From Setoptus koraiensis (Eukaryota > Animalia > Arthropoda): a DNA stretch of 64,000 nucleotides. The notes under the pieces are model-generated. The model was not told the origin of the DNA and searched no databases. It worked only from the letters and a program-made list of their open reading frames with translations. Both the position numbers and the translations under genes were made by a program. This document shows positions 7,310 through 45,892 of this stretch, one piece after another. Positions within the stretch are counted from its first letter, which is position 1; each line of letters starts with the position of its first letter. The DNA lies in NCBI GenBank assembly GCA_048013815.1, contig CM106585.1, forward strand, positions 4,526,001 to 4,590,000, written 5' to 3'.

Positions 7310-7322
7310 ACACACGCGCACG

Positions 7323-7360
<38 letters not shown>

Positions 7361-7432
7361 GACACACGCTGCGAAATGGGCCCGGTGATGCTGGCGACGC
7401 GACCGACGCGACCGACGCGACCGACGCGACCG
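7310..7432. repeat. (CA)n microsatellite followed by CGACGCGAC x4
   Basis: Directly visible. Confidence 0.92.
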
Positions 7433-19560: not shown

Positions 19561-19632
19561 CAACAGTCAAATGCACAGTCTGATACAGTACCGCTACAAT
19601 CCTTACCAGTCGGACCAAGCGGAATTGCCTGA
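18313..19632 (+). CDS. mael: Maelstrom-like protein, copy 1 (HMG-box-like N-terminus + MAEL domain), 439 aa
   Basis: N-terminal HMG-like segment; MAEL core YSFSCNVMC...YIPLEIAIYAYTIKNG...FVNPG.PP.G...AKQH...HKVP; C-terminal C-x-W-H...W-C-A completing the ECHC motif. Confidence 0.88.
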   Translation: MAKKKCNPYGEFVKAEYISLKKSNPKFNKPMGAMFSDPSVKEKWEKSDEETKQKFKDIAISKNEGTYVHHPSHRDTRPTPRQIANSSNNTTDLALSITNDAMVPTRDNQISVRPDMSVKSVEKLGLPGIPNSKKMMAQARESGKGFLLPDEMQYEFMASFRLFNRCKDIIHSKTHEELLEAPLYSFSCNVMCAENGPEDLYIPLEIAIYAYTIKNGVPKDKPAYLTFVNPGAPPVGKMNEAKQHYEETRHKVPFEPLSPFLEYARTDYREIYKEILEYVGEERILLCQHADYLQQIHGVLKWLAKKANEKTEKKTTGLIRPRAAASEQLPAADSWTVFDIKDYVYILGKRLYSTLPSDVYIEMLLGDEKFAYIEDYNCLWHNEADNESKWCAKSCAKRTINNLAELLEWFYNNYTAQQSNAQSDTVPLQSLPVGPSGIA

Positions 19633-24978: not shown

Positions 24979-26830
24979 ATGTTTAAACAGGTGAAAACAC
25001 TGACCTCTAAATTGGGTTACAAGCAACCAGCCACGGAAAACATCGCAAAATTTATCCTGGATGGTCTAGAAAAAAATAAAAACGAGACACTTATAGTAAG
25101 TGACCGGCTACATCTAGAAATTACTCTTTCTCACTCATCGCATAAACTATTTCTAATTTATTATATTTATCATTCAAACAACAGATTGATGCTGACAGTG
25201 GACGTCGCTGGACTGGTTCTGTATTGAAAAAGGCCGTCATACAATTGGCTAACTTCCTGACAAACGAATGTCAAATCAAGAAAGGAGATGTCTGCAGTCT
25301 CTTCCATACGCCTGATGATCGAGTCGCAATATGTATTCTCGGTATCACATTGGCCGGAGGCGTTACAAATTATCTCAGTGACAGCAACACCGCAAGTAAG
25401 CCATACCGAATACTGTATGACGAAACTGGTTGATTAACAATAATCGCAACACATAATGATCAATTTCTATTTTGCATTTCTATTTTGTCATCATAGGAGA
25501 ACTGCACGACACTGCAGTTGTTCTCAAGTCAAAGTTTCTGATTAGTGATCATGATACCTTGATCAGAGCTCATCCCAATTTGACTGATATCGAGAAGAAT
25601 TTATGTGTCATATCCACTAGTGAACCGGTCACGTCAAAGTTCACTAAGCTTGGTATATCCATACAGAAAATCCTCCAAAAACAATCAGAGGAACCCCACG
25701 AGCTGACTGATGGACTGAAGACTAGGATAAACGCAATCCAGCCTGATGACTTCGCCATAATTCAATTTTCTAGTGGAACTACGGGAAAACCAAAACCAAT
25801 ACCACGAACTAGCAAAAATCTAGTTCATCTTGTAAATTCAGTGGATCACAAAGAGATGATGGATCTGCACAGTGGAGCTGTGATAACAGGTTCATTGCCT
25901 ATAACTCATAGGCCTGGGCTGTGGGCTTTGTTGGCATCTGTCCATTGCGGAAGTACATTTGTGATTTGGAGCCATCTGTCTGACGTTGAGTCTGCACTGG
26001 CTACCATTGAAAAGTTCAAAGTTACCATATTTTCTTCCTCTCTACCATTCCTATCAATGTTAGGTAATGTGCCTGACAAAATTTTCGCAAAATACAATCT
26101 TTCCAGTTTGAAGCATGTAATCACCTCAGGAGCTAAGATCGTGCACGAGAATTTACCCAAAAAGCTCATGGTCCAATTCAATCTAGACAGTCTCAGACAA
26201 TGTTTTGGAATGACAGAATCTGGTTGGGTATTCCTTATTGAACAAACTTTGGCTAAGAATAACTATCTCTCAGTTGGACATGTTTGTCCTGGTATGGAAG
26301 CTAGGGTGGTTGATAGGAAGACCGGCGAAAGTGTTCCAGCCAATGAAAGAGGCGAAATTGCTTTGAAAGGTCCGCAAATATTCCCGGGTTATCTCACAGA
26401 TGTACCTGGAAAATTGAATAGAAATGATTTCGATGATGATGGGTGGTTCCGCATTGGAGATCAAGGTTACTTTAATGACGAGGAGTTAGTTTTCATTGAG
26501 GGTCGCTATAAGGAGAGCATGATCTTGGCAAATAATTACTTGGTGTTCCCTACAGAAATCGAGGCACTTATCAGTGAGCATCCAGCAGTGGAGGGTGTAT
26601 GTGTTGTTAAAAAGGAAGTGAAAAAGGATTTTGTGTATGATGTAGCGAAGGCATGTATCACACTAAAACACGATAGAAAAACTACAGAAGCAGAGATCAT
26701 TGAATTTTTGGCCAAAAGAGATTCGCAAGCGATCCTCATGGGCGGTGTTGAAATTCTTGATAAATTCCCCAGGCTAGGTAATGGAAAAGTGGACAAGCAA
26801 ACTCTAGCCAAATCCATCAAACATGATTGA
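24979..26830 (+). CDS. Luciferase/4-coumarate-CoA-ligase-like acyl-CoA synthetase; join(24979..25095,25185..25395,25497..26830), 553 aa
   Basis: Adenylation motifs FSSGTTGKPK, FGMTE, GEIALKGPQIFPGY, GWFRIGD, GRYKE and NGKVDK. Two GT-AG introns (89 and 101 nt) with consistent phases. The C-terminus is SIKHD, with no PTS1. Confidence 0.93.
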
Positions 26831-27370
26831 GATGTGTGTCAGCATTCGTACATGTCGACTCCTGCTGACGAAATGCGCGATATCTCGAGTTCTATTCTGC
26901 CAATTTTGGCGAACCATATAAAAACGATTTGAACAGACTGAAGTGCTCGTTAGATTAAAACGAAAACAAATTTGAAAAATTATCATGTTTTTGACACGTA
27001 CTCCCCCCCCCCCTTCCCCTAGATATACGATAGTCTTTCACCTAAAGTAATAGCTATTTTACTACATTTGTTTCAACAAGAAAATTTTGAAATGAAATTT
27101 ATTTTTTTTCTACCAATTGATCGGTCTAGTCGCATGGTCTCTAGCAGAATCTGCAGAAGTCTTGGTGCTTTAGAAATCTTGCTCAAAAAAAATATTTCAT
27201 GTTCAGCCTTCAAAGTTCCTGTTTCGGAGATTGTGGAATAATTGTAGTCTGCGAGTTACAGTTTGCTTGGAGATAAACAATTGAATTTAGTTGTACTTCA
27301 ACGTGTAAATAAATCTCAATATTTTATCAACCAGTTTGTCTAACGGGGTTTTAAGTGCCAAGTGGACGAA
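26488..27370 (+). repeat. Direct repeat copy 1 (~883 bp): ACS 3' end + convergent spacer + NRF-6-like 3' end
   Basis: Aligns end to end with 38105-38988 at roughly 95-96% identity by eye. There are 5 substitutions in the 343-bp ACS portion and more in the spacer. Confidence 0.97.
27287..27370 (-). pseudogene. Orphan 3' fragment (28 codons) of the NRF-6-like gene
   Basis: FVHLALKTPLDKLVDKILRFIYTLKYN* versus FVHLALKAPLDKLVDKILRFIYTLKYN* in the intact gene. Homology stops abruptly at 27370. Confidence 0.9.
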
Positions 27371-27904
27371 AACAGCAGCCGCATAATCTACATTGCGCCA
27401 CCCTCCCGATTTCAACTGGAAATATGAGTTCTGGATAATCGATGTTCATTGAGATAGCTCCAGTAGATGTAGGACTCATATTTTGAGTTATTGAGCCTGA
27501 GATTTGATGTGAATTGACCGTGGATAAGTACAGTAACTAACATAAATAAATTTGTGTGCATTTCCGCACGAGACCCGAAATACTGGAAGACCGCTAACTT
27601 TTCTCTTGTAGGAACAACTCCGATAGATTTTAACGAGCAATTTGGCCTAGCCTGGTCGTCGGCAAATAAACAAACTCATTGATTGCAAAGTATTGTAAGG
27701 TATTTATTTGTGTTGGAGTGTTAAGTGTTGGATGAAAGGCAATTTTTGGGTTCCATACTTAATCCAGTGAAATGCCTGGTGTTGGTTAGCAAAGGATGGA
27801 AATTGATCCCCGCGGATATTGAGAGATTGCCGAAATGCATGCCAGTGCTATCGCCGCATCAATTAATGATCAATATGGCGATCGCAAACATAAATAACGA
27901 GATC

Positions 27905-30900
27905 TCACATAACTTTATTTATAATGTTGACAATAGCTTCGGCGTTGTTCGCGAGAAAACTCTCGTGATTTCCAGGAAACTTGTACAAATCTATCCTTCC
28001 ATTGATTGACTGAATGAAATAGTGTAAACAAAGAAGTCAACGATTGTGGTTAGTATGATAGCTGAAGTCACTCAAAGTTATGAGATGATGAGACTCGCTC
28101 CTGATATAAAAAAAAAATTTCTCACCTTGGATAGCGAATAGTCATCGGCTGTTTTAACTCCATCCATATTAGCGATAACATCCTTTTGTGCCCTTATCAG
28201 TGTTGCATCACCAACGTAAGTCTTACTCGGCTTGTAGCTCAACAAGACTTGGGTCCGCCTATAATATCCCTCAATCGCGTCTAAAATATCATTCTGCTTT
28301 GATTTGTCGGTTATATTCAAAGAATGAGAGAGAATCTTGCAAGCTTCCTCAAATTTATCATTGAGGCCAGTCTTAATGGATGATAATTTTTTTAACACCT
28401 CCGCTTGATCGCAGGATCCTTTTGAATGATGCACCACGTATTCCTGGAGAAACTCATTCTCTCTTGATTCCAGCGCGGAACCTGAGAGCTTACCGAGCGA
28501 TTCCGCGACCCAAGGCGACATATCCAGCAGTATGTAGCGGCCTGGAACCAAATTCGTGCGACCCTCTCTTCGTCGATCTTGAATTAAAACTAATAGTTCA
28601 AATGCTATCGCACCACCATACGAATATCCAACAAGATCAACAACTCGAACATTGCTGGGATCCCTCATCTTCTGGTCACTCTTCAGTGTGGTCCAATTGA
28701 GATTTTCTAAATATTCAAAATAATATTCAGCGACTTCTGCGAACGACTTCAGCTTATTCAGCTTGTTTGTATAGTTGAGTCCAACGCATGGTCTAGAAAC
28801 ATTCTTACCAATCGTTTCCAATGGATCAAAAGTAGTATGCAGATGAGTGAGCACAAATACTGGCCGTGCAGTGGATGATATGGGTCGATCGTTCAGCATG
28901 AAGCAGTCTAATTTCGGCAGTTCGATTGGTGGATTAAATGCTGATTGTGTTCCGATCGATATTGAGAAGTTTGCCGCCTTGAGTGTTTCTACTTTCTTAA
29001 GAATCTCCGCATCATCCCCTCGTTTCTTGTTTCCAGAAGTTTTTTCTGTTTCTTCACTAGCGCCAATTTCTCTTATCCTATCGATAGTCAGAGCTCGTAC
29101 CTCTTGGGCCGTGAGAGATTGGCCAAACTCGCGCTCGATATATTGTCTTATCTCGACGGCCATGAGAGAATCTAAACCTAGCTCACCTAGTGTTGTTCCT
29201 CCATCCACCTTGCTGGCGTCTTTCACGCCCAGCACATGCAACACGGCCGCAACGAGATCTCCTCTAGTTGAGCCGCCAGACTTTTTATCTAGCAAAACAA
29301 GACTGGAACATATCGCAAATGGCGAACACAAGAGCTTAGCCAATGTAGAAAAGCACGATGGCATCCTTTGTGGAATGGTTCCACCAATAATTATGTCATT
29401 GCCGCCGAGGGTCTCGAATGCTATCCCGACGTCTCCAATGGCGCCCCATTGAATAGCAAGACCGTGTAGATTGTCTTGGCGACGTTGCTCGCAAACACGT
29501 TCCATGACTGAGTTGGCGTAACCGTAATTGGCTTGGCCTCCGTTGCCCTTGCCACAAGATACGGACGAAAAGGCTACAAACAAGGACATTTCGGGTGCAA
29601 CCTTTCGCGATATCTCGTCTAAGAACACGCACGCATCGGCCTTGGGCTTACAAACAAGATCGAAATCTTCGCTTGATATGTTCTCAAGTAGATTGTCCTT
29701 TAAAACGACGGCCAAGTGAAACAGACCACCGATTTCGCCATTTGGCGCTTGTTTCTTTGCCAATTTGAACAATTTCTCGATACCATCTCGTGTTGTTCCA
29801 TCTGCCATAGTTTTATCGACCACCAATAGTTTGCATTGTTTATTTTCCTCCAATCTCGACAAAACAACTTTCTGGTATCCAGTGCGTGCGCCCGACCGCG
29901 ATGTCACAACAAAATATCGACCACCAACTGATGCAAGCCATTTGATGAGTTCTAGTCCGAAACCACCAAGACCGCCTGTAATGATGTATGTCTTCGATGG
30001 ATCAAGCTCAAATCTAGGTATGGCTCGTAGGCCTCTTTTTGGCACTGATGAATTGGCAGAATGAGCATTCGGTTGTTTTTCTGGCTCGATTTCCACTAGA
30101 ATTTTCCCCATGTGTTTTCCTGTTGCCATGAATCTAAATGCCTCCTCAATTTTCTCTTTAGGAAAACAATGTTGCGGCAACGGCTTGATGTAGCCACTTT
30201 TTAGTCCATCTTGAAATACAGCCAGCCCTTGATCCAATTGTCGCATGAAATTGGGTGTCACTGTATCATAATCAAATACTTTGTCCAAGTGAACAGAATG
30301 GAATGTCTTGTTAATATCCAACATAGTCAATTCCAGTTTTGCATTCATAGCTTGATCGTATTTGCCTATTTCCAAGAATCGACCATTCTTCGCCAGACAT
30401 CTAACACTTGCTTGAAGTTTATCGTCCGCCAATGAATTGAGAACGAGATCAACACCACGACCTGACGTAGCCTCCATGATTTTCTGCTCAAATGAGCAAT
30501 CACGCGAGTTAAATATCTGGGCCTCACTCAGTCCGTCAGGATATTTTTGCAACAGAAATTGACGTTTCTCTTTGCTACCAACTGTGGTGAATACTTTCAA
30601 TTTATGATGCAGAGCCAACGTGATCGCTGCCTGACCAACGCCACCGGAGCCGGCGTGGATCAATATGGATTCGCCTTTTTGTATCTTGCCTCTAACGATT
30701 AGGGCCGCGATAACTGTCATGTAAGTGACAGGTAAAGTGGCTGCATCTTTTAGACTCATGCTGTCAGGAATTTCGAGCAATAGTGACGTTTTTTCGGGAC
30801 ATATAATCTCCGTGGCTATACATCTGCTTGGGATCATACCACACACTCGCTTTCCACTTGTGACATCAATTCCGGAAAATTCGAATCCTAACAAACAATC

Positions 30901-33900
30901 TTCGAGGGCTAATCTAATAGGTAAGGCATCCAGCGGCAATCGCCCAGTTGCCAACATAATATCTCTGAAATTGAGAGCCGAATAGTTAACTTTCACCAAT
31001 CGTTGTTTTTCGCCATCTACTGGATATGCCGTTGGCGTCTGATACCATTTGAAACTTGACAGGTCGCCCAGAGTTGACACATTTGCATAGGCTCTATGGG
31101 TTTCAATCAATTGTGATTCCCCACTTTCACACTTGTCGTCTGTATCGAAATAATCGTCCAATGTGATGTGCATAAATGATCCCCATTGTCCATCAGAGTT
31201 GATACAGTTCCAGAAAAGATCTTTTTTCAGTGCAACTTGGAAATTCGCGCTCTCTCTTATTGTCTCGATCGTCACGTCTTTCTCAAACTTTGTCTTGAAC
31301 GAATGACAGTCGAAAAAGCAGCGCAGATTGGCCAGGGTACCCACCTCTCTTTTGAGACATTGCACCAATCCCACGATACCGTTGAATGGGTTATTTTTCG
31401 TGGCGACACCGCAGAGCCATATAGTTTCCAATTCCTTCTTTTTTCCTTTGTCTGTTTCCTCCTGCTTTAACTCATCCTTCAATTGATTCAGCCAATTAGT
31501 ATAATTGCCATGCTGAACATGTATCAATTTATAAGCTTTGTTACCACAACTTCCTGATTGCTTCTTAGAATAAGTATCATTCTCTTTTAAACTAGAATCA
31601 ACCCCACAACCATTTCTATACAAATATAACGCACATCCGGTGGTGTCCATCTTTTTTCCTATCAATTCAAATTTGTATCGTCTCGCTTCGATCTCTAATA
31701 GCCGATTTCTGGCCTCACATGAACTTTGCGCCTGTTGCATTGCCTTGATGATATGATCATCAATTTCTTTTGATGGAACACTAGTTTGATTGGAGGAGTT
31801 GGTCTTAGCAACATGCTTCAATGCCAGTATAAATCTTTCTGCGAGGCTCAATTTGTATCGTGACATTACCAAGAGAAATCCGCCTTTTCTGATTACCCTC
31901 GCTAAATTGTTGAGTGTCGGAGATAGCTCATACGAATCTTCTTCGTTGATCGTGGTCGCATGACAACTTGTGTCGGATAAACAGACTGCATCGATGGGGC
32001 GATCTCTATTAATCAATGATAAAAGAGATGATTCACTTTCATGGCCGATGTCTTTCAGGATGTGCAATTTGACATTGTCATTTAGATTTTTAAAGTCATT
32101 TGGAGTCGGATGAGATAAAGTGTAGCTGAGTTTCGTTTGTGATGAAATGCTACTTATGAGTTTTTCCAAGTGTCCATAATGAATTGTATTGCCACTATTG
32201 ATTTCTAGTAGACGCAAATCACTTGTAAATTGGCAGCAGTTCTGAACGATTGTTTCTAGCATTGGTCTGGTGAAACGTTCAGTGCTAAAAGTAGAGAGTA
32301 TCATATCTTCACTGAAAATTTTTTCGTGTTTAATCATGGACTGAATCGTAAACGATATCAATGGTTCATTCTTGGTTTTTTCCAGAGAAGATTTCGATGA
32401 ATGGCTCAGCATCGAATCAAGCAATGACAGGAGCGTAAATGGCGAATTCTTGGCCAACTCCTCTGCTTTAGAATTGTCCGGTTGTGATTGTTGTTGACCA
32501 TTTTCTGTCGTTGTTGCTTTGTTCAATTCCTCATGACGAACAATTAAATGATCGCTGAGATATTGCTCTATCTCTTCGCTCTCTACATACTTAATGCCAT
32601 TGCGACTAATAGATTTAAGCAACCCGTTTGTGTCGGCTAACCTCGAGACAATGTTGTTACAAATCTGTTCATATCGCTCTCTGGATTGATTTTTGCTTAA
32701 TTCTAGATCTTTTACGGGTTCCTCGATGTCCAACAAAAATTTATAACTCTCCAATGTTGGCTCAGTCAACTCTCTTCTATTGACTGGCATGGCTTTTATT
32801 CCTCTCATCTCTATCCCATCAGTGATGACAATGCCTAGGATTGGATCGCAATAAGTATCAAAGATGCATTCTACTGATCGCTCTTCCTGATTGGATTGAT
32901 TGTTTTCATTATCGGTCGGTTCAATAGTGCTCTCTTTTGATGATTCTGTCACTATATAATCAACCTCGTTCTTACCAAAAAATTCTTTCACTTTCACGCC
33001 TGACTCGTGTATTTTACCAAGTATCACATCAGGATTGAATCTGATATAATCAAATCCAGTTGGTAAAAATAGAGCACCTTGAGTTGCGTGTGCGCAAATG
33101 GACAAAAATATTGATTGCAAGATGTTGTCAGTCAGAGCTACGAGTTGTCCGTTAAATTTGACCTTGACATGACGTCCGTTGCTCGAAGCCGATTGAATAC
33201 AACGGAATGTTTCACCATAGTCATATCCGTGCACCCTGAATTGTTTGTAGACATCATCATGACTCAGCGATTGTTCATTGTTTTCGTTGCTCAAACTATG
33301 AGCTATATCATCATACAAAAGACCCTTTGGATTGACTTCCGGAGATTTGGCGAAGCCATCAACTACAACTTGGCCACCCTCAGATACCACGAAATAGTCT
33401 GTCGCTGGCTCAAAAATTACAGATAGATCCACTGTTTTTTCTCCTAATATCACTGCTCTATGCAATCTAACATCTCGGAATTCGATAGGTTCATATGGTA
33501 TGACTAATTCACCGTCTTCTCCCCTTCTTTCGGTGAAGCTTATATCATGCATTCCTCGTTTGTTACATGAGAATACATACCACACAACGCATAAATATCC
33601 AGTTGCAGGATTCAGTACTCGGCCCTCCAGTGTATGACCTGAAAGGTATTTTTGGTTTTCATCTAGAAGATTGATGGGTTGTACCACGCGATTTGATTTA
33701 TCTGAAAAATAGTCAGGATATCTTGGAACACAGAACGGAATTGAGTGGTCCCATTTCATTAAAGAACTGATAGATGGCACCTGTTTTCTGACTGGTAATT
33801 TGATTTTCGGATAAAATGAACTCAATGTTGGATTAATGCCCATTTGAAACAGCTTGCCTATTGTGATGAAGAAATTCAGTAAGGGATTCTGGTCATTCTT

Positions 33901-36841
33901 TTTCATCAGTTTCGCATAAGATAATGGCTGATTGCTCGGTATGACTGTTCTGACAGTCGACTCAAATATTGCGTGGGGCCCAATTTCGATGACCACCTGG
34001 TCTGCATGCTGGATTCTTTCAACAGCCTGTCTAAAGTTGACTCTTTCGCACAAATTAGTTGCATAGTATTCTGCATTCGCCATTTTTAGAATTACTGAAT
34101 CATGGTCCTGACAGACACTAGAAAACCATTTATGTTCATTCCTGCTGTAGTCTGTGCCCGGATGCAACAATTTTCGTAAGTTTGCTATCAATTTGTTTTT
34201 GATATCGTCACGCATTATATGGGGATTGTGGAGTGCAAAATCAATGTTCAAGTCGGTGCACTGAATGCTTCCGCTATAATGCTTGCCAAGATATTGCAGA
34301 AACTCTCTGACGTGTTGTTTAGTGCCCGAAACTGTGACAGATTCTGGCCCGTTATCGCACGAAATGCATACAGTTGATGACGATTTTTGCTTCTTTTTTT
34401 CTTCAATGTAATTGTCTATGTTTTTTTGCGCTTCGTCAAAACCTAAACTAATCGCTACCATTGAACCTTCAATGAGATGCGCATTGTCTTTGAGCGTCGA
34501 AGCAATATGGTAGGCTAAAAGAATTGTTTCACGTTCGTCGAAAATTCCATCCGCATAAGCACACGCAAACTCTCCTACTGAATGACCAAGGATTCCACCT
34601 GAGGGTAAGATGTTTAGATGTGATTTTAAGATGTTGGTAAAAGCTATCTGAATAGCGGTTATTCCGACAAACGCATCAATTATTGCGAAGGTGTCGCCAT
34701 TTGCCGTTTCCAGTGATCGTATGAGATCGTATTCGAATGGCTTCAGTATTTCTTGTAATCTTTCAATTGTAGACCAAAACTGACTGAAATCTCGCATGCC
34801 TAACCCCATGCCTTGCCACTGCGAGCCCAAGCCCGGGTACACAAAGTAGCAAGCTACCGGTGCGCTATCTTGCAGATGGTGCTCAGCTCGACCAATATCC
34901 AACTTGTTGTGATCGGAATGACTGTTCGGCGAACTCAACTTACATTCGCAAATAGATCTATAGATTTCTGTTTGGGTTTTCAGGTCCAGTATGACAAAAC
35001 CACGCGCTCTCATCAATCTATCAATTTTGCCACTGCAAAGCGAATCTGTCAGGGCAAAAAAATCTCTTGTCAATGCTTTTTCTTTGACTCCTTCGGACAT
35101 GATAGAGTTGAAGAATGTCTCTAAACCCTGTTCGTGCCTGCCGAACATGAGAACTAAGCGATGACGTTCATTTGTCGCACTAAAATCAACGGTGCCGTCG
35201 TCTTTGAATGGCTCCACGATTGGCCTGTGATTTGAACGCAATATGGCATGCACGTTGGCCCCACCAAAACCATAACAGCTCAATGGTATGATGTGGGTAT
35301 TCAATTTTCGTTTCTCTGTTACAATCTGCACGCGTCCATCAGCAAGCGCTTCAATGTTAGGATTTGGCTTGTTAAAATTTAAACTTTTGTATATCATTTC
35401 ATTGTCGAGCATGAGAGCAACTTTTGCCAATGCACATAAACCACTTGCTACCTCCGAGTGACCCATATTCGTTTTGATGCTAGTGAGTGATAGCGGTCCA
35501 ATAGTTCTTTCGTTCGATGCATCTTTCGGACAATAAACACTCGATATGGCCTCGCACTCTATGGGATCACCGGCGGGTGTTCCAGTTCCGTGGGCCTCAA
35601 TTACTTCAACGTGATTTGAATGTAATCCGACTAGTGAATTTTTTGTTTCTCTTATCAGTGCTCCCTGTGTAATGGCCGCTGGAAAGGTGATGCCTTCTTT
35701 CTTGTAACCGTCCGCGTTCATTCTTGTAGCTAAAACCGTGCCGTATACTCTAAGAGCGGCATGCTTGCGTTGTAGAAAAACCGAAACACAAGCCTCGGAT
35801 TTGCAATATCCATCCACATCAGCGTCACCAAAACGAGTATAGCCAGTGGGTGATAACATTTTTAGTTTTGCGAATACTATGGTATTTTTAGGATCCAACG
35901 CTAAATTAACAGCGCAGACAATGGCCTGGTCAAGTTTACCGTGTTGGAAACTCAAAACTGCCTGTTGAAAGGCTCCGAAACCAGAGGCGCAGGCTAGATC
36001 GTATGCACAGGCTGGGCCTCGAAAGTCGTAGTACCTAGCGATTGCAGTTGCAAATTGAACGCTATATCCGCCTCCATCAAAATGGAGATCGTCACGCATT
36101 GCCTGCTCGGTTTCGCTCGTGAGAAAACTCAAAAAAATTCCAGTTTTAGTCCCTCGCAGGGAGGCGGGATTGACACCTGATAGGGGATTGGAATTGTTTG
36201 TTAGATTCGAACTCTTAGATTCGTTGCAGATTGAAGTACTCGGCTGCGCCTCAAGTTTGCATGCGAGAGTCTAAACTAGTTATCATAGTTCATTCAAACC
36301 TGCTGAGATTGAGATTTTTAGAATCAAACAGAGACGATTACTCACCTGAGTCCAAAATGGATTCGTAGACTCTCTCATATAACAATCTCAACTGGGGGTC
36401 AACAATTCTGTCCGCTCCGTAACCAAAAAATTCTCCATCAAATCGCCATACATCCTTCATGCGACCAGCCCTCGGTGGTAAATCCCACACTTGACGGGGA
36501 AAGCGAACCTCATCATTCTCAGTGCACATATCGCAGTTGTCGGTTAATAATTGTTTCAGTTCATCCATATTATCGGCGTTAGGGAAATAACCAGCCAACC
36601 CTGAAATTACAACATCGGTATCTGGAATGCTAAAAGGATCAACTATTTTCTCCGCTGCTTTTTTTGCTGATTTCATTGTAGTTGTTACAGTTTCAGAATA
36701 TTGCTGATTTTTCTCATAACTGGAACCATTTTCAGAGTGCGCCATTTCAAAGCCATCAATGGCATTCTCTGTGGTGTCCATTGAATTGTCGATCGGGTTA
36801 CTCTCACCCAACTGTTGAAGGTCTGTCGATAAAACAGGCAT
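27905..36841 (-). CDS. FASN: Type I fatty acid synthase-family megasynthase (KS-MAT-DH-pseudoMT-ER-KR-ACP-TE); complement(join(27905..28009,28126..36176,36346..36841)), 2883 aa; atypical MAT
   Basis: KS DLAC/EAHGTGT/NMGHSE; MAT GHSVG; DH HTLEGRVLNP and D in TDNILQ; ER HAGSGGVG; KR GGLGGFG and GQANY; ACP GLDSL; TE GYSYG, LLD and GNH in the last exon. Introns of 169 and 116 nt with matching phases. Confidence 0.95.
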
Positions 36842-38104
36842 TATCGATGTGTGATATGCTCTACTGTTGGTTGTGTTTATTTCTTTAGAGTTTATTTTTG
36901 TAATTGTTCTCTATTAGGAGAGCTCTTCCATGAAAATCTCGAGACACTTTCGTTATATACAACTCACTGTATAAGTATTGAATTTAGCTTGTCGTATTCA
37001 TCCAGTGGTGGGTTTCAAAATAAGATGCATCTACTTATAGACAATCATTGATGAATACAGCAACAAAATACAAATAATCAGAGTGAAACGGCCGAGTGAA
37101 AGATCTAAACATGGACAACATAATCGAAGTGTGAGCACGAGTTAAAAAAAAGTTCACCCTTAAAAGGCGAAGTCTGCCTCGAATTTCCGAATGGAAAAAT
37201 TTATCTCTATCTTGAAGAGGCGCCTCAGTCTCCGTTATCATTGTCAATCTCCAATTATAAAGCGACTAAAACTATTTTGCTTCCAATCCCTCGTCTTGCC
37301 ATCAAGCAACAGTCACTCCGAAATATCAGACTATTTTTTATTTCAATGTGCTGCACTAGAGTTTACTTAGTCAATGATTTCGGAGTAACGAGGGGAGCAT
37401 TTCATCGGATTCGATCGTGTCCGAAAAAAATTCAAAATTTAAGCGATAATATTGGTACGTATGAGAATAATCCATGCAAGCAGAGCATGGATTTTGCGTG
37501 ATGCTTACTCGTCGAATGTCTTTAACAGCGCCCATACAATTTAATGTAATACTCGATTGAGCCATCAAACCGGTTAGTGTGGAAATCTCAACTTGAGATA
37601 AATATCTTGATTGCTTTATCCGATTCTTATGATCATCTTTGCTAGTGACAGGTTCGGCATTTCTGACGTAATGTCTGCGTACTGTCTGGAAAATAGATTT
37701 TTTCTGGTTCTTTTCATAGGAAGTATGCGTTTTTTTTGAGTGGATCACCATATTTTCACCATTGCCATTTTACATTCTATGTAACAAGAGGTACATTTCA
37801 CCAGATCATATCGGTATTCGACAATCTCTGGTGTAATGTATACCAAGATAAATTTTATGTTGTCAAAATATAAAAAATGATTCTGTCTGACGGTTACTTT
37901 GTTGATATCGTGCTCATTCCCAATTCTGTTTGACGAACTCATTAACATCCTCCTCAGTAGTAGTGATATTATGAAACCGGTTAGAGTGAATCTGATTTCG
38001 TAACATATCATTAACGATAATGATATTAAGCGTTTAATTTGACACTCTTTTACAGATATTGCCTATTGGTCCAATAAGTAGCTAATACATCTTATAATTA
38101 GTTC

Positions 38105-38447
38105 AGTTTTCATTGAGGGTCGCTATAAGGAGAGCATGATCTTGGCAAATAATTACTTGGTGTTCCCTACAGAAATCGAGGCACTTATCAGCGAGCATCC
38201 AGCAGTGGAGGGTGTATGTGTTGTTAAAAAGGAAGTGAAAAAGGATTTTGTGTATGATGTAGCGAAGGCATGTGTCACACTAAAACACGATAGAAAAACT
38301 ACAGAAGCAGAGATCATTGAATTTTTGGCCAAAAGAGATTCGCAAGCGATCCTCATGGGCGGTGTTGAGATTCTTGATAAATTCCCCAGGCTAAGTAATG
38401 GGAAAGTGGACAAGCAAACTCTAGCCAAATCCATCAAACATGATTGA
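38105..38447 (+). pseudogene. 5'-truncated duplicate of the acyl-CoA synthetase (C-terminal subdomain only)
   Basis: Matches the last ~113 codons of the ACS with only I>V and G>S changes. The frame and stop are intact, with an in-frame ATG at 38136. Confidence 0.85.
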
Positions 38448-38988
38448 GATGTGTGTCAGTATTCGTACATGTCGACTCCCGCTGACGAAATGCGCGATAT
38501 CTCGAGTTCTATTATACCAATTTCGGCGAACCATATAAAAATGATATGAACAGACTGAAGTGCTCGTTAGATTAAAACGAAAACAAATTTGAAAAATTAT
38601 CATGTTTTTGACACGTACTCCACTCCCCTTCCCTTAAATATACGATAATCTTTCAGCTAAAGTAATAACTATTTTACTACATTTGTTTCAACACGAAAAT
38701 TTTAAAATGGAATTTATTTTTTTTTTCTATCAATTGATCGGTCTAGTCGCATGGTCTCTAGCAGAATCTGCAGAAGTCTTGGTGCTTTAGAAATCTTGCT
38801 CAAAAAAAAACATTTCATGTTCAGCCTCCAGAGTTCCTGTTTCGGAGATTGTGGAATAATTGTAGTCTGCGAGTTACAGTTTGCTTAGAGATAAACAATT
38901 GAATTTAGTTGTACTTCAACGTGTAAATAAATCTCAATATTTTATCAACCAGTTTGTCTAACGGGGCTTTAAGTGCCAAGTGGACGAA
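38105..38988 (+). repeat. Direct repeat copy 2 (~884 bp)
   Basis: Counterpart of 26488-27370; its right end is the true 3' end of the NRF-6-like gene. Confidence 0.97.
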
Positions 38989-41978
38989 CAACGATAGTGC
39001 CAATACTGTCGGCGCAGCGGCGCAAGCTTCTTTCGACATCTTCATAAGACTAAAAGGACCAAGGCCGTGGTAATCGCTAAAGACAAAAAAATAAATAACC
39101 TCCCATTGAATCAAATACACACAATAGGTGATGCGACTACACACAATCCAGAGTTTATGTCTTAGCCATCGTGACTGTTTGGCAACGTCTGTAGATAAAC
39201 GTATTATCACAATTAGGTTGCAGAATATCCAAGCGACTATCATGCATGGCAATTGTAACGACACAATAAATTTTCTCAGATTTTCATATTCATTATCAAT
39301 GCCCATGATACTATCGTAGAAATCAGTTGCGATGACTATCAATCCCGGCATAGCAAATATAGGCAGGTGTGCCCAAAGAGCCAATTTGAACCAATTGCCT
39401 CGCATCCAACGGGGCCAATAGTTTTTGTTTTTCTGCGCTGATTTCACATTTAACAGCTTTCCTCCGATCCTTTTTGTCTCATCATCCTGTTTTAACTGCT
39501 GCCCTTGAAAAGTGTTATACTCATAGATAATGATGCCTGCTAAAACTCCGGCCAATGCCTGTGGCAACCTGAAGAATAGGTCGCGAAGAATAGCAATGTC
39601 ATAGTACTTGGCATCCCTAACAAGTGTGCATCACGAATATGACAGGTGACAGGTAATTGTTAAGGTTAATTGTTATCGTCTGTGGCATTGAGTGTTTAAT
39701 TTGATCAGTTTAAGCTCTAGTTTACTTACACTGCTATTGCTATTAGGAAGTACCTTTGGAATGCACGACTGTCGCCAGCGGAACTGTTGTACATCCACTC
39801 GAACGTCAGGTAAAACGAAACTGACATAAATAGGGCCACCAGGGCCACTCTAAAACGTCGGAATCTTTTCACATAATTGATTTGATGGTCATTTATTGAT
39901 AGATGGATTGTTGTTAGATGGAAGAATAGATAATATATGATTATAATATAATGTAATTGGGCCGGTTTAGATTGACATAACATGTTTACTTACCTCAGCA
40001 TGAGGTAGGTGAGGGGCGGTAGTAGAAGGAATACTCTGAGTAATGCTTCCAGGAACCAGGCTTCGACTTTGCATGGCAGAATGATGTGGTGCTTAAATTG
40101 ATTGAAGGGCAATATATAATGATACCATTCGCTGGTTTGTCTGCACGCTCCCCGGAACGAATGTCTATTAGTCCCGTAGTCCCACGAAGGTCCACTCCCT
40201 AACAGGGGTGCCAAAGAATAACTGAACCAGTACAGTATCATGTAAACGGGGCACATCTTCAAGAACAAGTTTACCTGAATTGCCAAATAAGCTAATGGAT
40301 TGACAAGATACCTATAGTGCCTCTGTGCATTGTTCAATATTCTCATAACAGTAAATCCGAACATTACGCCCGCAACAATGAAGAATGTATCCAATATCAG
40401 TGGAAACGATTCTAGAATGAAAATCATTCTTGATGACAACAAACCAATCATCAGACCGGGTGTCGTTATTTTGAAAGTGTTTAGAAGAATGGTGTGGCCA
40501 AAAATTAACGAATAAGCACAAACAACTTTGATCATGTTGATTGGCACCAAATTAACGTGTTCCGTTCGATCAATTATATTGTCGACAGACACAAGCTCTC
40601 GGAAGCTCTGCTGAAGTGAAAATATTCCAATCAATTGGTCTATGAAATCACTTTTATAATTTGTCTTCAGCTGGCTCTTAGTCTCATCGATAGGCCGATT
40701 ATTGCCACGATTATCCACCCCGGCCTCATTAGGGGCGACAAATTTTTCCATTTCAGTCAATGGCAACATCCCCCTAGGATCGTAGTTGTCTATTCCAACA
40801 ATATCACTCTCAACGCGATCTTGTTGTTTATACGCCGTTTGTTGTTGTTGCTCAAAAGCGACAACAAGTTTTTCAGGTTTAGGCTGCCGAATAAAACAGT
40901 CATAAATAGTGACCGAGAAAACAATCGATAGCCACACAACGCCGAAACCAATGAGCGCCCATCCGGCTGGCTGCAACTGACGTAACGGGCTACTCTCATC
41001 TGGCAGACAATATAATTCAACCATTTTGTACCTGTCTTTTAAGTGTTCGGGAAAATTCATTAGCAGTAGCTTCTCCATGATCTCGCCATTTGGGCCTCCA
41101 TTAGCTGTTGCTGTTGACCAAGATTGGGTATCGCATGTCTCGGGCAAACACATTCCCGCCAATATTCTTGGCTTTGGCACGAATGTGTCGTTCGTCGGCC
41201 AACTGACAGACACCAATTTGCCATAACAATAACGAGTCTTGATTATATTTGTGGCTTTGTTTGTTTCGCCTCCATGGCTCACCGGCTCATCATCCAACCG
41301 ACTGTTGTTGTCGTTTTGAATATCAGTAAGATCGAATTGGAATCTGAGACATTGCTCATAAGATCCGAACCACATTGATTTTCCCAGATAAGAGGCAGCC
41401 TCGGGACGACCGAATGAGTCGATATAATTGGACAGGTTGAATTGAATTTCACCGTTGCTAAACATCAATTTAGTGTTGCTTTCGGGCTCGTTGCTTGTAA
41501 GTTGCTTAAGTAGCCATTGCAAATGTTGCCGGCACAGCAAATTGTTGACTGGTAACCCACCCGACACTGCTAGATCCTCTGGAGATGAATAAGTGAATGG
41601 GTCAGTAGCATAAAAACTAAAATACTCGAATGATCTCAAAGCGTGATACTGCAACAATTCACCCTGTTTCAGCTTAGTGGGGCCAATTGCCATTCTCACT
41701 AGATCATGTGGATTGATGTATTCTTCCATTCGTATCAGACTATTTGATGTTTTATTCCACAGGAATGGAAATCTTTTGATCTTTTCATCTTGATTCCCGA
41801 AAATGTGTCGCTTATATCTGTGGAAACTTTTGTTGTCTATTAAGTTGTCAGTTGATACTGTTCTTGCTGCTTCCTCTTGGCTTCTTGAATCAACTTGTGG
41901 CGACTTTGACGAACAAAGATTCGCCTCTATCACTAACAAGGTGATTGAAATAAACGTTAATCCGCGTAGAAATGACAT
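38905..41978 (-). CDS. Nose-resistant-to-fluoxetine-6-like protein (signal peptide + NRF domain + acyltransferase-3 membrane domain); complement(join(38905..39616,39730..39864,39994..41978)), ~943 aa
   Basis: Signal peptide; NRF domain IDSFGRPEA...WFGSYEQC and GMCLPETC; AT3 K-x10-H, DTFF and SRITYCVYL. GTAAGT donors at 39993 and 39729, all phase 2. An alternative in-phase acceptor would start exon 3 at 39568. Confidence 0.88.
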
Positions 41979-44290: not shown

Positions 44291-45870
44291 TTTCATGCTT
44301 TGAAGCACCACTCAAATATGATAGCTGCCACTTCATCTCAATCCCACTTTAATCAATTGTCAGTTGACAAATTAATTAGCTGATCTTATCGATCATTGGA
44401 TCGCATATAATATGCGGTAGTTTTTGAAACTAAACATTTCAAAGTTGGCGCTACTTTATTGAGCCTCAAAAAATAAACAAACGCATCTGTTCCATGCGGA
44501 TGATGCCAGTCCACGCGTAAACACACCAGAAGTGAGTGTCGAACTCGTGGAAAATACATGTATCATTTGTTTGATACAGTATTTGAGATTTCCTTATGCA
44601 ATTTTACAATTACAGACTTCTAAATATGTATAGACTTATCCTCCTTTGCAGATGATCTTATACACTAGCAATACTCCACAATTGATTCGCGAGCCTAAGC
44701 GACCTAACGAAACATCAACTTTTAAATTATTCGGACGAGACAAACGCCCATCCAGAGCCTCCAGTCAATTAGGCAGTAGTTGGAGCGAATAAATCAAAGA
44801 TCGCCAATCATCAACAAAATGGCCAAGAGGAAATACAATCCCTATGGGGAGTTTGTCAGGGCCGAATATCTTTCACTCAAAAAGTCCAATCCTAAATTCA
44901 ACAAGCCCATGAGTGCTATGTTCGGTAATCCGGCGATAAGAGAAAAATGGAAGAGCAGTGACGAAGAGACAAAGCAAAAGTTCAGAGACATTTCCGTGAG
45001 CAAAAATGAAGGAACCTACGTCTATCACACTTCCCATCAGAATAAGGGCCAGGGATTCCAACAGCCAGACGAAATGAGAAACGATTTCATGGCAAGCCAG
45101 AAATTATTCAATCGTTGCGAAGATATCATTCACTCCAAAACTTACGAGGAACTGCTTGAGGCACCACTTTATTCATTTAGTTGCAATGTTATGTGCGCAG
45201 AAAATGAATCCGAAGAACTCTACATACCACTGGAAATCGCAATTTATGCATATACACTCAAGAACGGTGCACCTAAAGACAAGCCTGTCTACCTGACATT
45301 CATCAATCCAGGGGAGCCACCAGTAGGCAAAATGAATGAAGCTAAAAAACATTACGAAGATACAAGGCATAAAGTACCATTTGAGCCCTTGGCGCCTTTC
45401 TTGCCATATGCTAGGACAGACTATCGCGAAATCTATAAAGAGATCCTAGAATATGTTGGAGAGGAAAGAATTTTATTGTGCCAGCATGCTGATTATATTC
45501 AACAAATTTATGGCGTCCTCAAATGGCTGGCCAAAAAGGCTAATGAAAAACCCTTCACAAGTACCATTGGTCTAATCCGACCTCAGACAGCTAATGAATT
45601 GCCTGCCGCCGATAGCTGGCGTATATGTGATATCTCGGAGTACGCCTTCCAAATGGGCAAACGTCTCGGTTCGCCTTTGCCGGCATCCGTGTGTATTGAG
45701 ATGCTCTTGGAAAACATGAGACTAGCTTATGCAAATCATTTAAATTGCGAGTGGCATAGTTTGCCCCAAAATGAAACACAATGGTGCGCTAAGTCTTGTT
45801 CAGTACGAACTATTGTTAATCTGGAAAACCTATTCGATTGGTTCAAGGATACTTACTCGAAAAAAGAAAG
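44291..45870 (+). repeat. Segmental duplication unit 2 (Maelstrom gene plus upstream)
   Basis: Colinear with 17791-19560 in the same orientation, ~26.5 kb apart. Confidence 0.92.
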
Positions 45871-45892
45871 AGCCACAACAACCTGCCATTAA
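44819..45892 (+). CDS. mael: Maelstrom-like protein, copy 2, 357 aa
   Basis: Same HMG-like and MAEL motifs, including YIPLEIA and CEWH...WCA. ATG at 44819 is homologous to copy 1; the ORF track starts at an upstream TTG. Confidence 0.88.
   Translation: MAKRKYNPYGEFVRAEYLSLKKSNPKFNKPMSAMFGNPAIREKWKSSDEETKQKFRDISVSKNEGTYVYHTSHQNKGQGFQQPDEMRNDFMASQKLFNRCEDIIHSKTYEELLEAPLYSFSCNVMCAENESEELYIPLEIAIYAYTLKNGAPKDKPVYLTFINPGEPPVGKMNEAKKHYEDTRHKVPFEPLAPFLPYARTDYREIYKEILEYVGEERILLCQHADYIQQIYGVLKWLAKKANEKPFTSTIGLIRPQTANELPAADSWRICDISEYAFQMGKRLGSPLPASVCIEMLLENMRLAYANHLNCEWHSLPQNETQWCAKSCSVRTIVNLENLFDWFKDTYSKKERATTTCH

What the first reader, a model, noticed from the sequence alone, without database searches (positions are those of the whole stretch)
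26488..38988. The synthase is a 10.7-kb cassette bracketed by ~883-bp direct repeats built from the ends of its neighbours
Seen: the order is [intact ACS, spacer, 28-codon NRF-6 tail] - 10,734 bp with the intron-containing FAS and ~1.26 kb upstream - [ACS tail, spacer, intact NRF-6]. Inference: ACS and NRF-6 were originally adjacent convergent genes, and the FAS entered by a DNA-level event (template switching or single-crossover integration of a circle). The retained introns argue against retroposition. One crossover between the repeats would excise an ~11.6-kb FAS circle and leave both neighbours intact, while unequal exchange would amplify FAS. This predicts presence/absence or copy-number variation. 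The ~4-5% repeat divergence implies recent assembly.
Basis: partly seen in the sequence, partly recalled or inferred. Interest (0 to 1): 0.75.

Follow-up and report, generated by a model that had tools for sequence, protein, structure and literature searches.

The report
FAS gene copy pasted between neighbours
In a tiny gall-mite genome, a 10.7-kb piece carrying a whole fatty-acid-synthase-like gene was copied from a site about 225-236 kb away and pasted between two tail-to-tail genes, re-copying 883 bases of the landing site; this is a clean germline example of a known repair error, and it recurs in this genome.

Summary
R1 (26488-27370) and R2 (38105-38988) are sharp-edged direct repeats, 96% identical, with only two copies in the genome. 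Each holds the ACS 3' end, a spacer and the NRF-6 3' end.

New here: the whole 10,734-bp interior is a 94% inverted copy of a locus about 225-236 kb away. It carries a 159-bp relic of that locus's Rubicon-like neighbour, so the direction is donor to window. The three junctions show 3 bp, 2 bp and about 0-4 bp (plus one orphan base) of microhomology. There are no TE ends, and the intron and promoter are retained.

The best reading is one templated-insertion "cycle": template switching during repair or replication that re-copied 883 bp of host. Integration of a circle by homologous crossover is not supported, because the donor has no R.

Both FAS copies are intact (dS 0.075, dN/dS 0.58, symmetric rates). 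The ACS-FAS-NRF6 neighbourhood is therefore young, not an ancestral cluster.

The scan noted the same architecture at other places in this genome. I verified three of those places and found a new one beside the donor. Repeat identity is a poor clock. Excision and copy-number predictions remain untested. The mechanism class is known.

The parts
24979..26830 (+). Intact acyl-CoA synthetase / 4-coumarate-CoA-ligase-like gene (ACS). ORF pieces are 24979-25227 and 25472-26830; the exact splice sites were not determined.
   Evidence: Pfam AMP-binding 4e-47 plus AMP-binding_C. Single copy in the genome, next paralogue 34%. Orthologue-like hits in eriophyoid mites at 50-65%.
26488..27370 (.). R1, left copy of the duplicated host segment: functional ACS tail 26488-26830, spacer 26831-27286, relic NRF-6 tail 27287-27370 (minus strand, 28 codons).
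27368..27370 (.). Junction J1 (host R1 to donor template 1): 3-bp microhomology GAA, within a 7/9 imperfect match.
   Evidence: Three-way comparison of window, R2 and donor.
27371..27520 (-). Template 1: relic of the 3' coding end of the donor's Rubicon-like neighbour. The homology block is 27362-27520, 159 bp, 95-96% identical to G000:C1:4801679-4801837 and to its local duplicate at 4806489-4806647.
   Evidence: RH_dom / RUBC_PIKBD in the donor gene
27519..27520 (.). Junction J3 (template 1 to template 2): 2-bp microhomology CG. It skips 2,386 bp of donor sequence (the Rubicon-like gene body).
27521..38104 (-). Template 2: inverted copy of G000:C1:4788718-4799292. It comprises the FAS 3' flank, the FAS gene and 1.26 kb of 5' non-coding DNA.
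   Evidence: blastn 94.3% over 9.6 kb plus 80-90% blocks upstream. Partitioned divergences.
28078..36841 (-). Type-I FAS-like gene: exon 2 at 28078-36176, intron at 36177-36345, exon 1 at 36346-36841. Domains are KS-AT-DH-pseudoKR-ER-KR-ACP plus a weak thioesterase-like C-terminus.
   Evidence: Pfam. Start codon, GT..AG intron and open frames are conserved with the donor copy. 92% aa identity to the donor copy. dS 0.075, dN/dS 0.58. Symmetric rates, 46 vs 44.
38101..38104 (.). Junction J2 (template 2 back to host R2): donor match ends in GTT, then one orphan C (38104), then host sequence. The host has AGTT just upstream of its breakpoint, so microhomology is 0-4 bp depending on how the orphan base is placed.
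38105..38988 (.). R2, right copy of the duplicated host segment: relic ACS tail 38105-38447 (still an open frame, 2 aa differences), spacer 38448-38904, functional NRF-6 tail 38905-38988.
   Evidence: (AMP-binding_C in ORF 38136-38447)
38905..41978 (-). Intact NRF-6-like gene. ORF pieces are 38905-39567, 39726-39983 and 39990-41978.
   Evidence: Pfam NRF N-terminal domain 1e-8. Nearest paralogue 57% on the other contig.

Best explanation
The FAS-like gene between the repeats is a duplicative insertion. ACS (+) and NRF-6 (-) were once adjacent tail-to-tail genes. During repair of a break or a collapsed fork in their shared 3' region, a growing DNA end left the host at 27370. It primed on 3 bp of microhomology at a locus ~225-236 kb away on the same chromosome, in inverted orientation, and copied 159 bp of a Rubicon-like gene's tail. 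It then jumped 2.4 kb ahead on that template (2-bp microhomology) and copied 10.6 kb containing the complete FAS gene, with its promoter region and intron. Finally it returned to the host 883 bp behind the point of departure. Re-copying those 883 bp produced R1 and R2. This topology is a 'cycle of templated insertions', equivalent to an 883-bp tandem duplication with a long templated insert at its junction. Because the duplicated host segment spans both gene tails, both neighbours stayed intact and the two spare tails have no promoter. Shown: the donor, the direction, the junction sequences, the intactness of all three genes, and that the event was DNA-level. Inferred: that all three junctions arose in one event (the 2.4-kb skip could be a later deletion), and that synthesis-based template switching, not another joining route, made them.
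For: The repeats are real, sharp-edged and unique to this locus. The whole interior 27362-38103 matches G000:C1:4788718-4799292 and 4801679-4801837 in inverted orientation at 94%. The FAS proteins are 92% identical. The insert carries a 159-bp fragment of the donor's neighbour, whose intact gene sits at the donor locus. The donor locus has no ACS or NRF-6 sequence. The junctions have 3 bp, 2 bp and 0-4 bp (+1 nt) of microhomology. There are no terminal inverted repeats (longest 5 bp) and only two copies genome-wide. Intron, start codon and 1.26 kb of upstream DNA were co-duplicated. Neutral-type divergences are of the same order: R spacer 0.050, FAS dS 0.075, cassette non-coding 0.043-0.090. 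[quoted passage not shown] Microhomology plus iterative template switches are the FoSTeS/MMBIR signature (PMC5120786). Tandem duplications of ~1 kb with microhomology and templated inserts arise from end-joining of failed SDSA intermediates in C. elegans (PMC8654963). The same architecture recurs in this genome with the same junction signature.
Against: R is less diverged than the insert's non-coding DNA. Whole R is 28/881 against 142/1864 (P=3e-6), and the spacer alone gives P=0.04. A strictly simultaneous origin therefore needs later gene conversion between R1 and R2, or constraint on R. The 2.4-kb skip may be a later deletion, which would remove the 'two templates' argument. Microhomologies of 2-3 bp are only modestly above chance. 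By the standard expectation P(m)=(m+1)(1/4)^m(3/4)^2, P(>=3) is ~0.05 and P(>=2) is ~0.16. No reads, population data or sister-species synteny could be examined. Distant ACS homologues (58-64%) in metagenome contigs show no NRF-6 nearby, so the ancestral adjacency is inferred from this genome alone.
Confidence: 0.75

Rival explanations
1. Staggered-break capture. Two single-strand nicks 883 bp apart on opposite strands opened the ACS/NRF-6 3' region. The long overhangs were filled in, duplicating the 883 bp. A free double-stranded copy of the FAS region was then ligated between them by microhomology-mediated end joining.
For: It gives the same final topology. Staggered breaks with fill-in are the accepted explanation for kb-scale duplications at Drosophila inversion breakpoints (PMC1885836). 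Short junction microhomology is compatible.
Against: The donor is retained, so a free extra copy of a 13-kb region must be postulated. That fragment would already have to be chimeric (159 bp + 10.6 kb), or a later deletion is needed. Unwinding 883 bp is a recognised difficulty of the model (PMC1885836).
Confidence: 0.15
2. Circle integration. An extrachromosomal circle carrying FAS integrated by one homologous crossover within R, creating the flanking direct repeats.
For: A single crossover between a circle carrying R and the chromosomal R would give R-insert-R. The reverse reaction (excision of an 11.6-kb circle) is geometrically possible.
Against: The circle would need to contain R, but R exists only at this locus and the donor locus has none. 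The R/insert boundaries are illegitimate junctions with 0-4 bp of homology, not crossover products inside homology.
Confidence: 0.03
3. Ancestral ACS-FAS-NRF6 order. A local tandem duplication and later deletions produced the repeats, and the copy at 4.79 Mb is the derived one.
For: None was found. Only the lack of sister-species synteny leaves it formally open.
Against: The window copy carries a fragment of the other locus's neighbour gene. The host duplication flanks the window copy. No arrangement of tandem duplication plus deletion puts the NRF-6 tail to the left and the ACS tail to the right of FAS with identical contiguous R units (reasoning).
Confidence: 0.02
4. Assembly artefact (haplotype merge or chimeric join) in a pooled-population long-read assembly.
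For: If this is the published Setoptus koraiensis assembly, it was built from more than 100,000 pooled wild mites with noisy CLR reads and Flye.
Against: R1 and R2 differ by 3.2-5%, against a reported heterozygosity of ~1.1%. The insert differs from its donor by 5.6% and keeps an intact 2,800-codon gene under selection. The junctions are precise. A 30-kb read library spans the 12.5-kb structure. The same architecture occurs at several independent loci.
Confidence: 0.04

Closest known systems
Cycles of templated insertions (somatic structural-variant class defined in human cancer genomes; Li et al. 2020, PMC7025897)
   Same: Copies of one or more distant templates are strung together and inserted. 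The string returns to the host and re-replicates a host segment, so the insert is flanked by a host duplication. Donors are retained. Small (<1 kb) templates are often linked to larger ones.
   Different: This case is a germline event carried in a mite reference assembly (fixed or common). It has a whole functional gene as cargo, is ~5-9% diverged, and has both neighbour genes preserved. It is not a somatic tumour event.
FoSTeS/MMBIR complex chromosomal insertions (Gu et al. 2016, PMC5120786; Lee 2007 and Hastings 2009 as cited there)
   Same: Duplicative insertion at a non-adjacent locus, often inverted. Junctions show 1-5 bp of microhomology or 1-3 nt insertions. Iterative template switches occur, with small copy-number changes at the insertion site.
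   Different: The human cases are large (tens of kb to Mb) pathogenic rearrangements. This one is gene-sized and apparently neutral or beneficial.
Pol-theta-dependent tandem duplications from failed SDSA in C. elegans helq-1 mutants (Kamp et al. 2021, PMC8654963)
   Same: Tandem duplications of ~100 bp-10 kb (median ~1 kb). The junction between the two repeats shows microhomology and sometimes templated inserts. The 883-bp host duplication fits that size class.
   Different: The reported inserts are short patchworks from flanking DNA, not a 10.7-kb copy from ~225-236 kb away. No genetic dependence could be tested here.
Staggered-break duplications at Drosophila inversion breakpoints (Ranz et al. 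2007, PMC1885836)
   Same: kb-scale duplication of unique, often genic, sequence flanking a rearranged segment, without transposons.
   Different: Those duplications are inverted and flank inversions. Here they are direct and flank a duplicative insertion.
Transposon target-site duplication / gene capture by transposable elements
   Same: An insert flanked by a direct duplication of the target.
   Different: TSDs are short and of fixed length. Here the duplication is 883 bp, with no terminal repeats, no transposase and only two copies.

Membership tests
Cycle of templated insertions / template-switch duplicative insertion | The inserted DNA is a copy of a template elsewhere, and the template is retained. 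| tested here: met
   The donor at G000:C1:4788718-4799292 is intact and 94% identical.
Cycle of templated insertions / template-switch duplicative insertion | The string returns to the host upstream of the departure point, so a host segment is duplicated on both sides of the insert. | tested here: met
   R1 and R2 are 883/884 bp with sharp ends and are unique to this locus.
Cycle of templated insertions / template-switch duplicative insertion | Junctions show microhomology or a few untemplated bases, not long homology. | tested here: met
   J1 3 bp, J3 2 bp, J2 0-4 bp plus 1 orphan base.
Cycle of templated insertions / template-switch duplicative insertion | Two or more templates strung together in one event. 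| tested here: inconclusive
   159 bp and 10.6 kb come from positions 2.4 kb apart in the donor. A later deletion in the copy would look the same.
Cycle of templated insertions / template-switch duplicative insertion | All junctions arose concurrently. | tested here: inconclusive
   Divergences are of the same order, but R is lower than the insert. Gene conversion could explain this. An intermediate allele could not be sought.
Retroposed gene copy | Loss of introns, no promoter co-duplication, poly(A) tail. | tested here: not met
   The 169-bp intron, 1.26 kb of upstream DNA and 0.56 kb of downstream DNA were co-duplicated.
Transposable-element-mediated insertion | Terminal repeats or other element ends, multiple copies, short fixed-length TSD. 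| tested here: not met
   No inverted repeats. Two copies only. The target duplication is 883 bp.
Homologous (NAHR / circle) integration | The incoming molecule shares the repeat sequence with the target. | tested here: not met
   R is absent from the donor and from the rest of the genome.
Conserved animal biosynthetic gene cluster (ACS + FAS/PKS-like + membrane acyltransferase) | Co-localisation is old, or shared by the paralogous/orthologous locus. | tested here: not met
   The adjacency was created by this insertion (dS ~0.075). The donor copy's neighbours are a Rubicon-like gene and unrelated ORFs. ACS homologues in other eriophyoids lack FAS or NRF-6 within 10 kb.
Conserved animal biosynthetic gene cluster (ACS + FAS/PKS-like + membrane acyltransferase) | Co-expression or a shared product. 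| not testable with these tools
   No expression or chemistry data are available.

The most novel reading that the evidence does not exclude
The FAS cassette would be one instance of a genome-wide habit. In this eriophyoid mite, gene duplication and relocation would proceed mainly by transposon-free templated-insertion cycles. These land preferentially in the shared 3' regions of convergent genes and re-copy 0.03-1.6 kb of host. The resulting R-gene-R cassettes would have flanks later homogenised by gene conversion, and the cassettes could hop again. The donor FAS is itself bracketed by a decayed 82-bp repeat that is unique to its locus. A repair-gene background could underlie this: a POLQ-type locus is present, and no second POLQ/HELQ-type helicase was detected in this assembly.
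Probability: 0.3. Interest if true: 0.7.

Novelty: new member of a known kind. Interest (0 to 1): 0.45.

Why it matters
First, it is an unusually complete natural record of a templated-insertion cycle in an animal germline. Donor, host, all three junctions and a whole functional gene as cargo are all visible. This class is mostly known from tumours and patients.

Second, it dates and explains the ACS-FAS-NRF6 neighbourhood. The apparent "biosynthetic cluster" was assembled by one recent rearrangement, so co-localisation here is not evidence of an old functional unit. It could still be a cluster in the making.

Third, the same architecture recurs in this 49-Mb genome, mostly at tail-to-tail gene pairs. 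This points to a systematic, transposon-independent route of gene duplication and relocation that could be quantified.

Fourth, the R-FAS-R geometry predicts excision and copy-number polymorphism of a lipid-synthesis gene. That is testable in populations of a plant-feeding mite.

Tried and rejected
Synteny in relatives:
- The one metagenome scan returned ACS homologues of only 58-64% identity, with no NRF-6, FAS, CortBP2 or Maelstrom within 10 kb. This says nothing about the ancestral order.
- The word searches found no relative closer than 65% for ACS or 48% for FAS, although a 91% relative exists for POLQ. The duplication could therefore not be dated against a speciation.

Unbiased survey for R-X-R structures:
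I did not try to get around it.

Smaller tests:
- TE hypothesis: no inverted repeats or terminal repeats.
- Is the 82-bp repeat flanking the donor FAS a gene-head duplication? Protein comparison of the two ORFs was weak. It is nonetheless unique to that locus.
- Asymmetric evolution of the new copy: rejected, 46 vs 44 polarised changes.
- Clustering of R mismatches into conversion tracts: the longest-tract test was not significant (P=0.61). The coding tails are, however, less diverged than the spacer (P=0.004).
- HELQ loss as the cause: only a lead. One POLQ_helical locus and no full-length paralogue were found. The status of HELQ in mites is unclear, since T. urticae has a POLQ-like 'helq' (PMC13571142).

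Not done:
- The big representative-protein search and structure prediction were not used, because no claim needed them.
- Exons were searched separately by reference.


Full report
**Observation.** The repeat pair is real. The repeat finder reports four collinear blocks with one spacing. A global alignment with 300-bp flanks shows identity jumping from background to ~96-100% exactly at 26488/38105 and falling back after 27370/38988. The two units are 883 and 884 bp, with 28 substitutions and 5 indel columns. The 49-Mb genome contains only these two copies. The window is G000:C1:4526001-4590000.

**Organism.** It is an eriophyoid (gall/rust) mite. The best named hits of the neighbour genes are Fragariocoptes setiger and Aceria tosichella. 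The assembly has two chromosomes, and the second is 24,533,333 bp. That equals the N50 of 24.53 Mb reported for Setoptus koraiensis. I treat this identification as probable, not proven, because the published total (47 Mb) differs from 48.76 Mb.

**Anatomy.**
- Left of the structure lies an AMP-binding acyl-CoA-synthetase/4CL-like gene on the plus strand, ending at 26830. It is single-copy in the genome.
- Right of it lies an NRF-6-like gene on the minus strand, ending at 38905.
- Each repeat unit contains the last 343 bp of ACS coding sequence, a 456-bp spacer and the last 28 codons of NRF-6.
- R1 completes ACS and R2 completes NRF-6. The other two tails are relics without upstream exons or promoters, and both still read open.
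- Between the repeats lie 10,734 bp with a type-I FAS-like gene on the minus strand. Domains are KS, AT, DH, pseudo-KR, ER, KR, ACP and a weak thioesterase-like C-terminus.
- It has two coding exons separated by a 169-bp GT..AG intron (36177-36345). The start codon is at 36841, and ~1.26 kb of upstream DNA follows.
- I searched the exons separately by reference and did not build or search a joined spliced model.

**Where the insert came from.** A six-frame search of the genome finds a second FAS copy, 92% identical in protein, at C1:4790690-4798732 on the opposite strand. The FAS genes lie ~236 kb apart, and the insert and donor edges ~225 kb apart. I fetched 50 kb around it. blastn shows that the entire interior of the cassette is homologous to that locus and nothing else is:
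- Window 27519-37092 matches 4799292-4789717 at 94.3%.
- Window 37099-38103 continues to 4788718 at 80-90%.
- Window 27362-27520 matches 4801679-4801837 at 96%.

The last 159 bp are the 3' coding end of a Rubicon-like gene (RUBC_PIKBD and RH domains) that lies intact just downstream of the donor FAS. Three facts fix the direction as donor (4.79 Mb) to window (4.55 Mb). The window copy carries a fragment of the other locus's neighbour. The other locus has no ACS or NRF-6 sequence. The host duplication flanks the window copy.

**Junctions.** Three-way comparisons (window, other R copy, donor) resolve all junctions.
- J1: host sequence runs to 27370 and donor sequence starts at 27368. The overlap is GAA, 3 bp, inside a 7/9 imperfect match.
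- J3: the Rubicon-tail piece joins the FAS 3' flank through a shared CG (27519-27520). This skips 2,386 bp of donor, the Rubicon-like gene body.
- J2: the donor match ends in GTT at 38103, one orphan C follows, and host sequence resumes at 38105. The host has AGTT immediately upstream of its breakpoint, so microhomology is 0-4 bp depending on how the orphan base is read.
- The first and last 100 bp of the insert share no inverted repeat longer than 5 bp. The insert sequences exist in two copies only, so a transposable element is excluded.

**Age and selection.**
- Jukes-Cantor divergence in R is 0.050 in the spacer, 0.015 in the ACS tail, 0.012 in the NRF-6 tail and 0.033 overall.
- Between insert and donor it is 0.073 (3' flank), 0.043 (intron), 0.090 (5' non-coding) and 0.056 overall.
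- For the large FAS exon, dS is 0.075, dN is 0.043 and dN/dS is 0.58. Windows near or above 1 fall in the DH region and the C-terminal 300 residues.
- With the next paralogue (C2:16.19 Mb, 52-58%) as outgroup, 46 changes fall on the window copy and 44 on the donor copy. Both copies are intact and evolve alike.
- R is less diverged than the insert's non-coding DNA: spacer P=0.04, whole R P=3e-6. The coding tails are less diverged than the spacer (P=0.004). One functional copy in each tail pair explains part of this. Gene conversion between R1 and R2 is the likely remainder.
- R identity is therefore an unreliable clock. 'Recent' should be read as dS ~0.05-0.09. That is far younger than the split from any relative in the databases (at most 65% aa for ACS, at most 48% for FAS).

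**Rival histories.**
- Retroposition is excluded by the retained intron and flanks.
- Homologous integration of a circle needs R on the incoming molecule. R occurs nowhere else, and the boundaries are illegitimate junctions.
- No series of tandem duplications and deletions from an ancestral ACS-FAS-NRF6 order yields two contiguous, identical tail-spacer-tail units on either side of FAS. That order also would not explain the Rubicon relic.
- An assembly artefact is unlikely. The copies differ by 3-6% against ~1.1% heterozygosity, the junctions are precise, the gene is intact, the library insert (30 kb) exceeds the structure, and independent loci show the same design. I could not inspect reads.

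**Recurrence.**
1. In the donor locus itself, the Rubicon-like gene (+) and an SGTA-like TPR gene (-) form a convergent pair. It is split by a 4.06-kb insert (C1:4802406-4806461) between direct repeats made of the Rubicon tail, a spacer and an SGTA fragment. The Rubicon-tail block is 98.5% identical and the other two blocks (spacer, SGTA fragment) 91%.
   - That insert is a mosaic of pieces from C1:1.897 Mb (87%), a multicopy family (~75%) and C2:5.608 Mb (92%).
   - Its right junction has a 5-bp microhomology and its left junction has ~24 bp of filler.
2. The donor FAS is bracketed by an 82-bp direct repeat (84% identity) that occurs nowhere else in the genome. The donor copy may itself be an older insertion of this kind.
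3. Earlier notes of this scan list look-alikes elsewhere in the genome. I fetched four and confirmed three:
   - a TBK1 gene between 968-bp repeats (97.6%) made from a Tctex-1 gene (+) and a WD40 gene tail (-);
   - an ACSL-like gene between repeats made from a carboxypeptidase tail (+) and the region beside a CDC50 gene (-);

   The fourth place showed only a 188-bp, 87% pair.
4. Four of my five verified cases sit in convergent gene pairs. The binomial P is 0.016 against an expected quarter, and ascertainment bias is possible.
5. In the TBK1 case the nearest paralogue of the insert is only 71-75% identical, and the Gpdh1 insert has no second copy at all, yet their repeats are ~98% identical. 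This again points to conversion of the repeats, loss of donors, or both.

**Mechanism and what is known.**
- The topology matches the published class 'cycles of templated insertions'. These are strings of copied templates that return to the host and re-replicate a host segment, often with a small template linked to a large one (PMC7025897).
- The junction signature matches FoSTeS/MMBIR-type insertions (PMC5120786).
- A DSB-repair version is documented in C. elegans. When SDSA fails, Pol-theta joining of over-extended ends gives tandem duplications of ~0.1-10 kb (median ~1 kb) with microhomology and occasional templated inserts (PMC8654963).
- The staggered-break model of Ranz et al. (PMC1885836) gives the same host duplication. 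It needs a free, already chimeric copy of the donor, so I rank it second.
- Why convergent gene ends? A duplication spanning two gene tails leaves both genes whole and the spare tails promoter-less, so such events should survive selection best. A mechanistic bias, such as fork or transcription conflicts at convergent 3' ends, is possible but untested. Both are inference.

**A lead, not a result.**
- The genome has one POLQ-type locus. The helicase-like domain and the Pol A domain lie within 5 kb at C1:19.99 Mb.
- There is no second helicase of the POLQ/HELQ type. Only short helicase-motif matches to other SF2 helicases were found.
- This resembles the helq-1 situation that produces tandem duplications in worms.
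- The assembly is ~89% BUSCO-complete. The status of HELQ across mites is unclear, since T. urticae has a POLQ-like 'helq' (PMC13571142). No causal claim is made.

**Consequences.**
- The ACS-FAS-NRF6 neighbourhood that another first-stage note reads as a biosynthetic cluster was created by this single insertion. The donor copy has unrelated neighbours. Co-localisation is therefore young and, by itself, no evidence of joint function.
- One crossover between R1 and R2 would restore the ACS/NRF-6 pair and release an 11,617-bp circle. Unequal exchange would amplify FAS. The longest perfect tract is 94 bp, so such events are possible but probably infrequent. They remain predictions.

**Limits.** The large representative search and structure tools were not needed. 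No contig looked human, and no step had to be referred.

Noticed in passing
L018:1652-7973 (= G000:C1:4801652-4807973): A second insert of the same design sits next to the donor FAS. A Rubicon-like gene (+) and an SGTA-like gene (-) are split by a 4.06-kb mosaic insert made of pieces from three other loci. It lies between direct repeats built from their ends, with a 5-bp microhomology at one junction and ~24 bp of filler at the other.
   Followed up: partly
L016:8228-8309 and L017:9482-9562 (= G000:C1:4788228-4788309 / 4799482-4799562): An 82-bp direct repeat (84% identity), unique in the genome, brackets the donor FAS segment. It may be the decayed host duplication of an older FAS insertion.
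   Followed up: partly
window 17791-19317 and 44291-45619: Two Maelstrom-domain genes (ORFs 18313-19632 and 44780-45892) share 85-88% nucleotide identity over ~1.3-1.5 kb. They have the same orientation, lie 26.5 kb apart, and flank the whole CortBP2-ACS-FAS-NRF6 block. This is an older duplication of unknown mechanism.
   Followed up: no
window 28078-36132 (FAS exon 2), codons ~800-1200 and ~2400-2684: dN/dS between the two FAS copies is ~1.0-1.2 in the dehydratase region and the thioesterase-like C-terminus, against 0.1-0.4 elsewhere. Changes are shared equally by both copies.
   Followed up: partly
window 53429-58783 (-): A GC-rich (53-56% against ~40% background) single ORF of 1,784 codons, with only a weak rhodopsin-type 7TM match near its N-terminus.
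   Followed up: no
window 5500-7500: The most GC-rich stretch of the window (67% in 6001-8000). It has overlapping long ORFs on both strands, no Pfam match and no tandem repeat.
   Followed up: no
L053/L051 (G000:C1:19991302-19996301): A compact POLQ-type locus: the helicase-like domain ORF and the Pol A domain ORF lie ~1.4 kb apart. No second POLQ/HELQ-type helicase was detected in the genome. Eriophyoid database proteins of this family are ~870 aa and lack the polymerase domain.
   Followed up: partly
L045:3458-6595 (G000:C1:9640158-9643295): Two almost complete SRPRB reading frames (98% identical) flank a single-copy 358-codon ORF that has no other copy in the genome. Either a relocation followed by donor loss, or repeats kept alike by conversion.
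   Followed up: partly
L029:3-3715: In a metagenome contig of another eriophyoid-like mite, two ACS homologues lie in tandem, whereas this genome has one.
   Followed up: no
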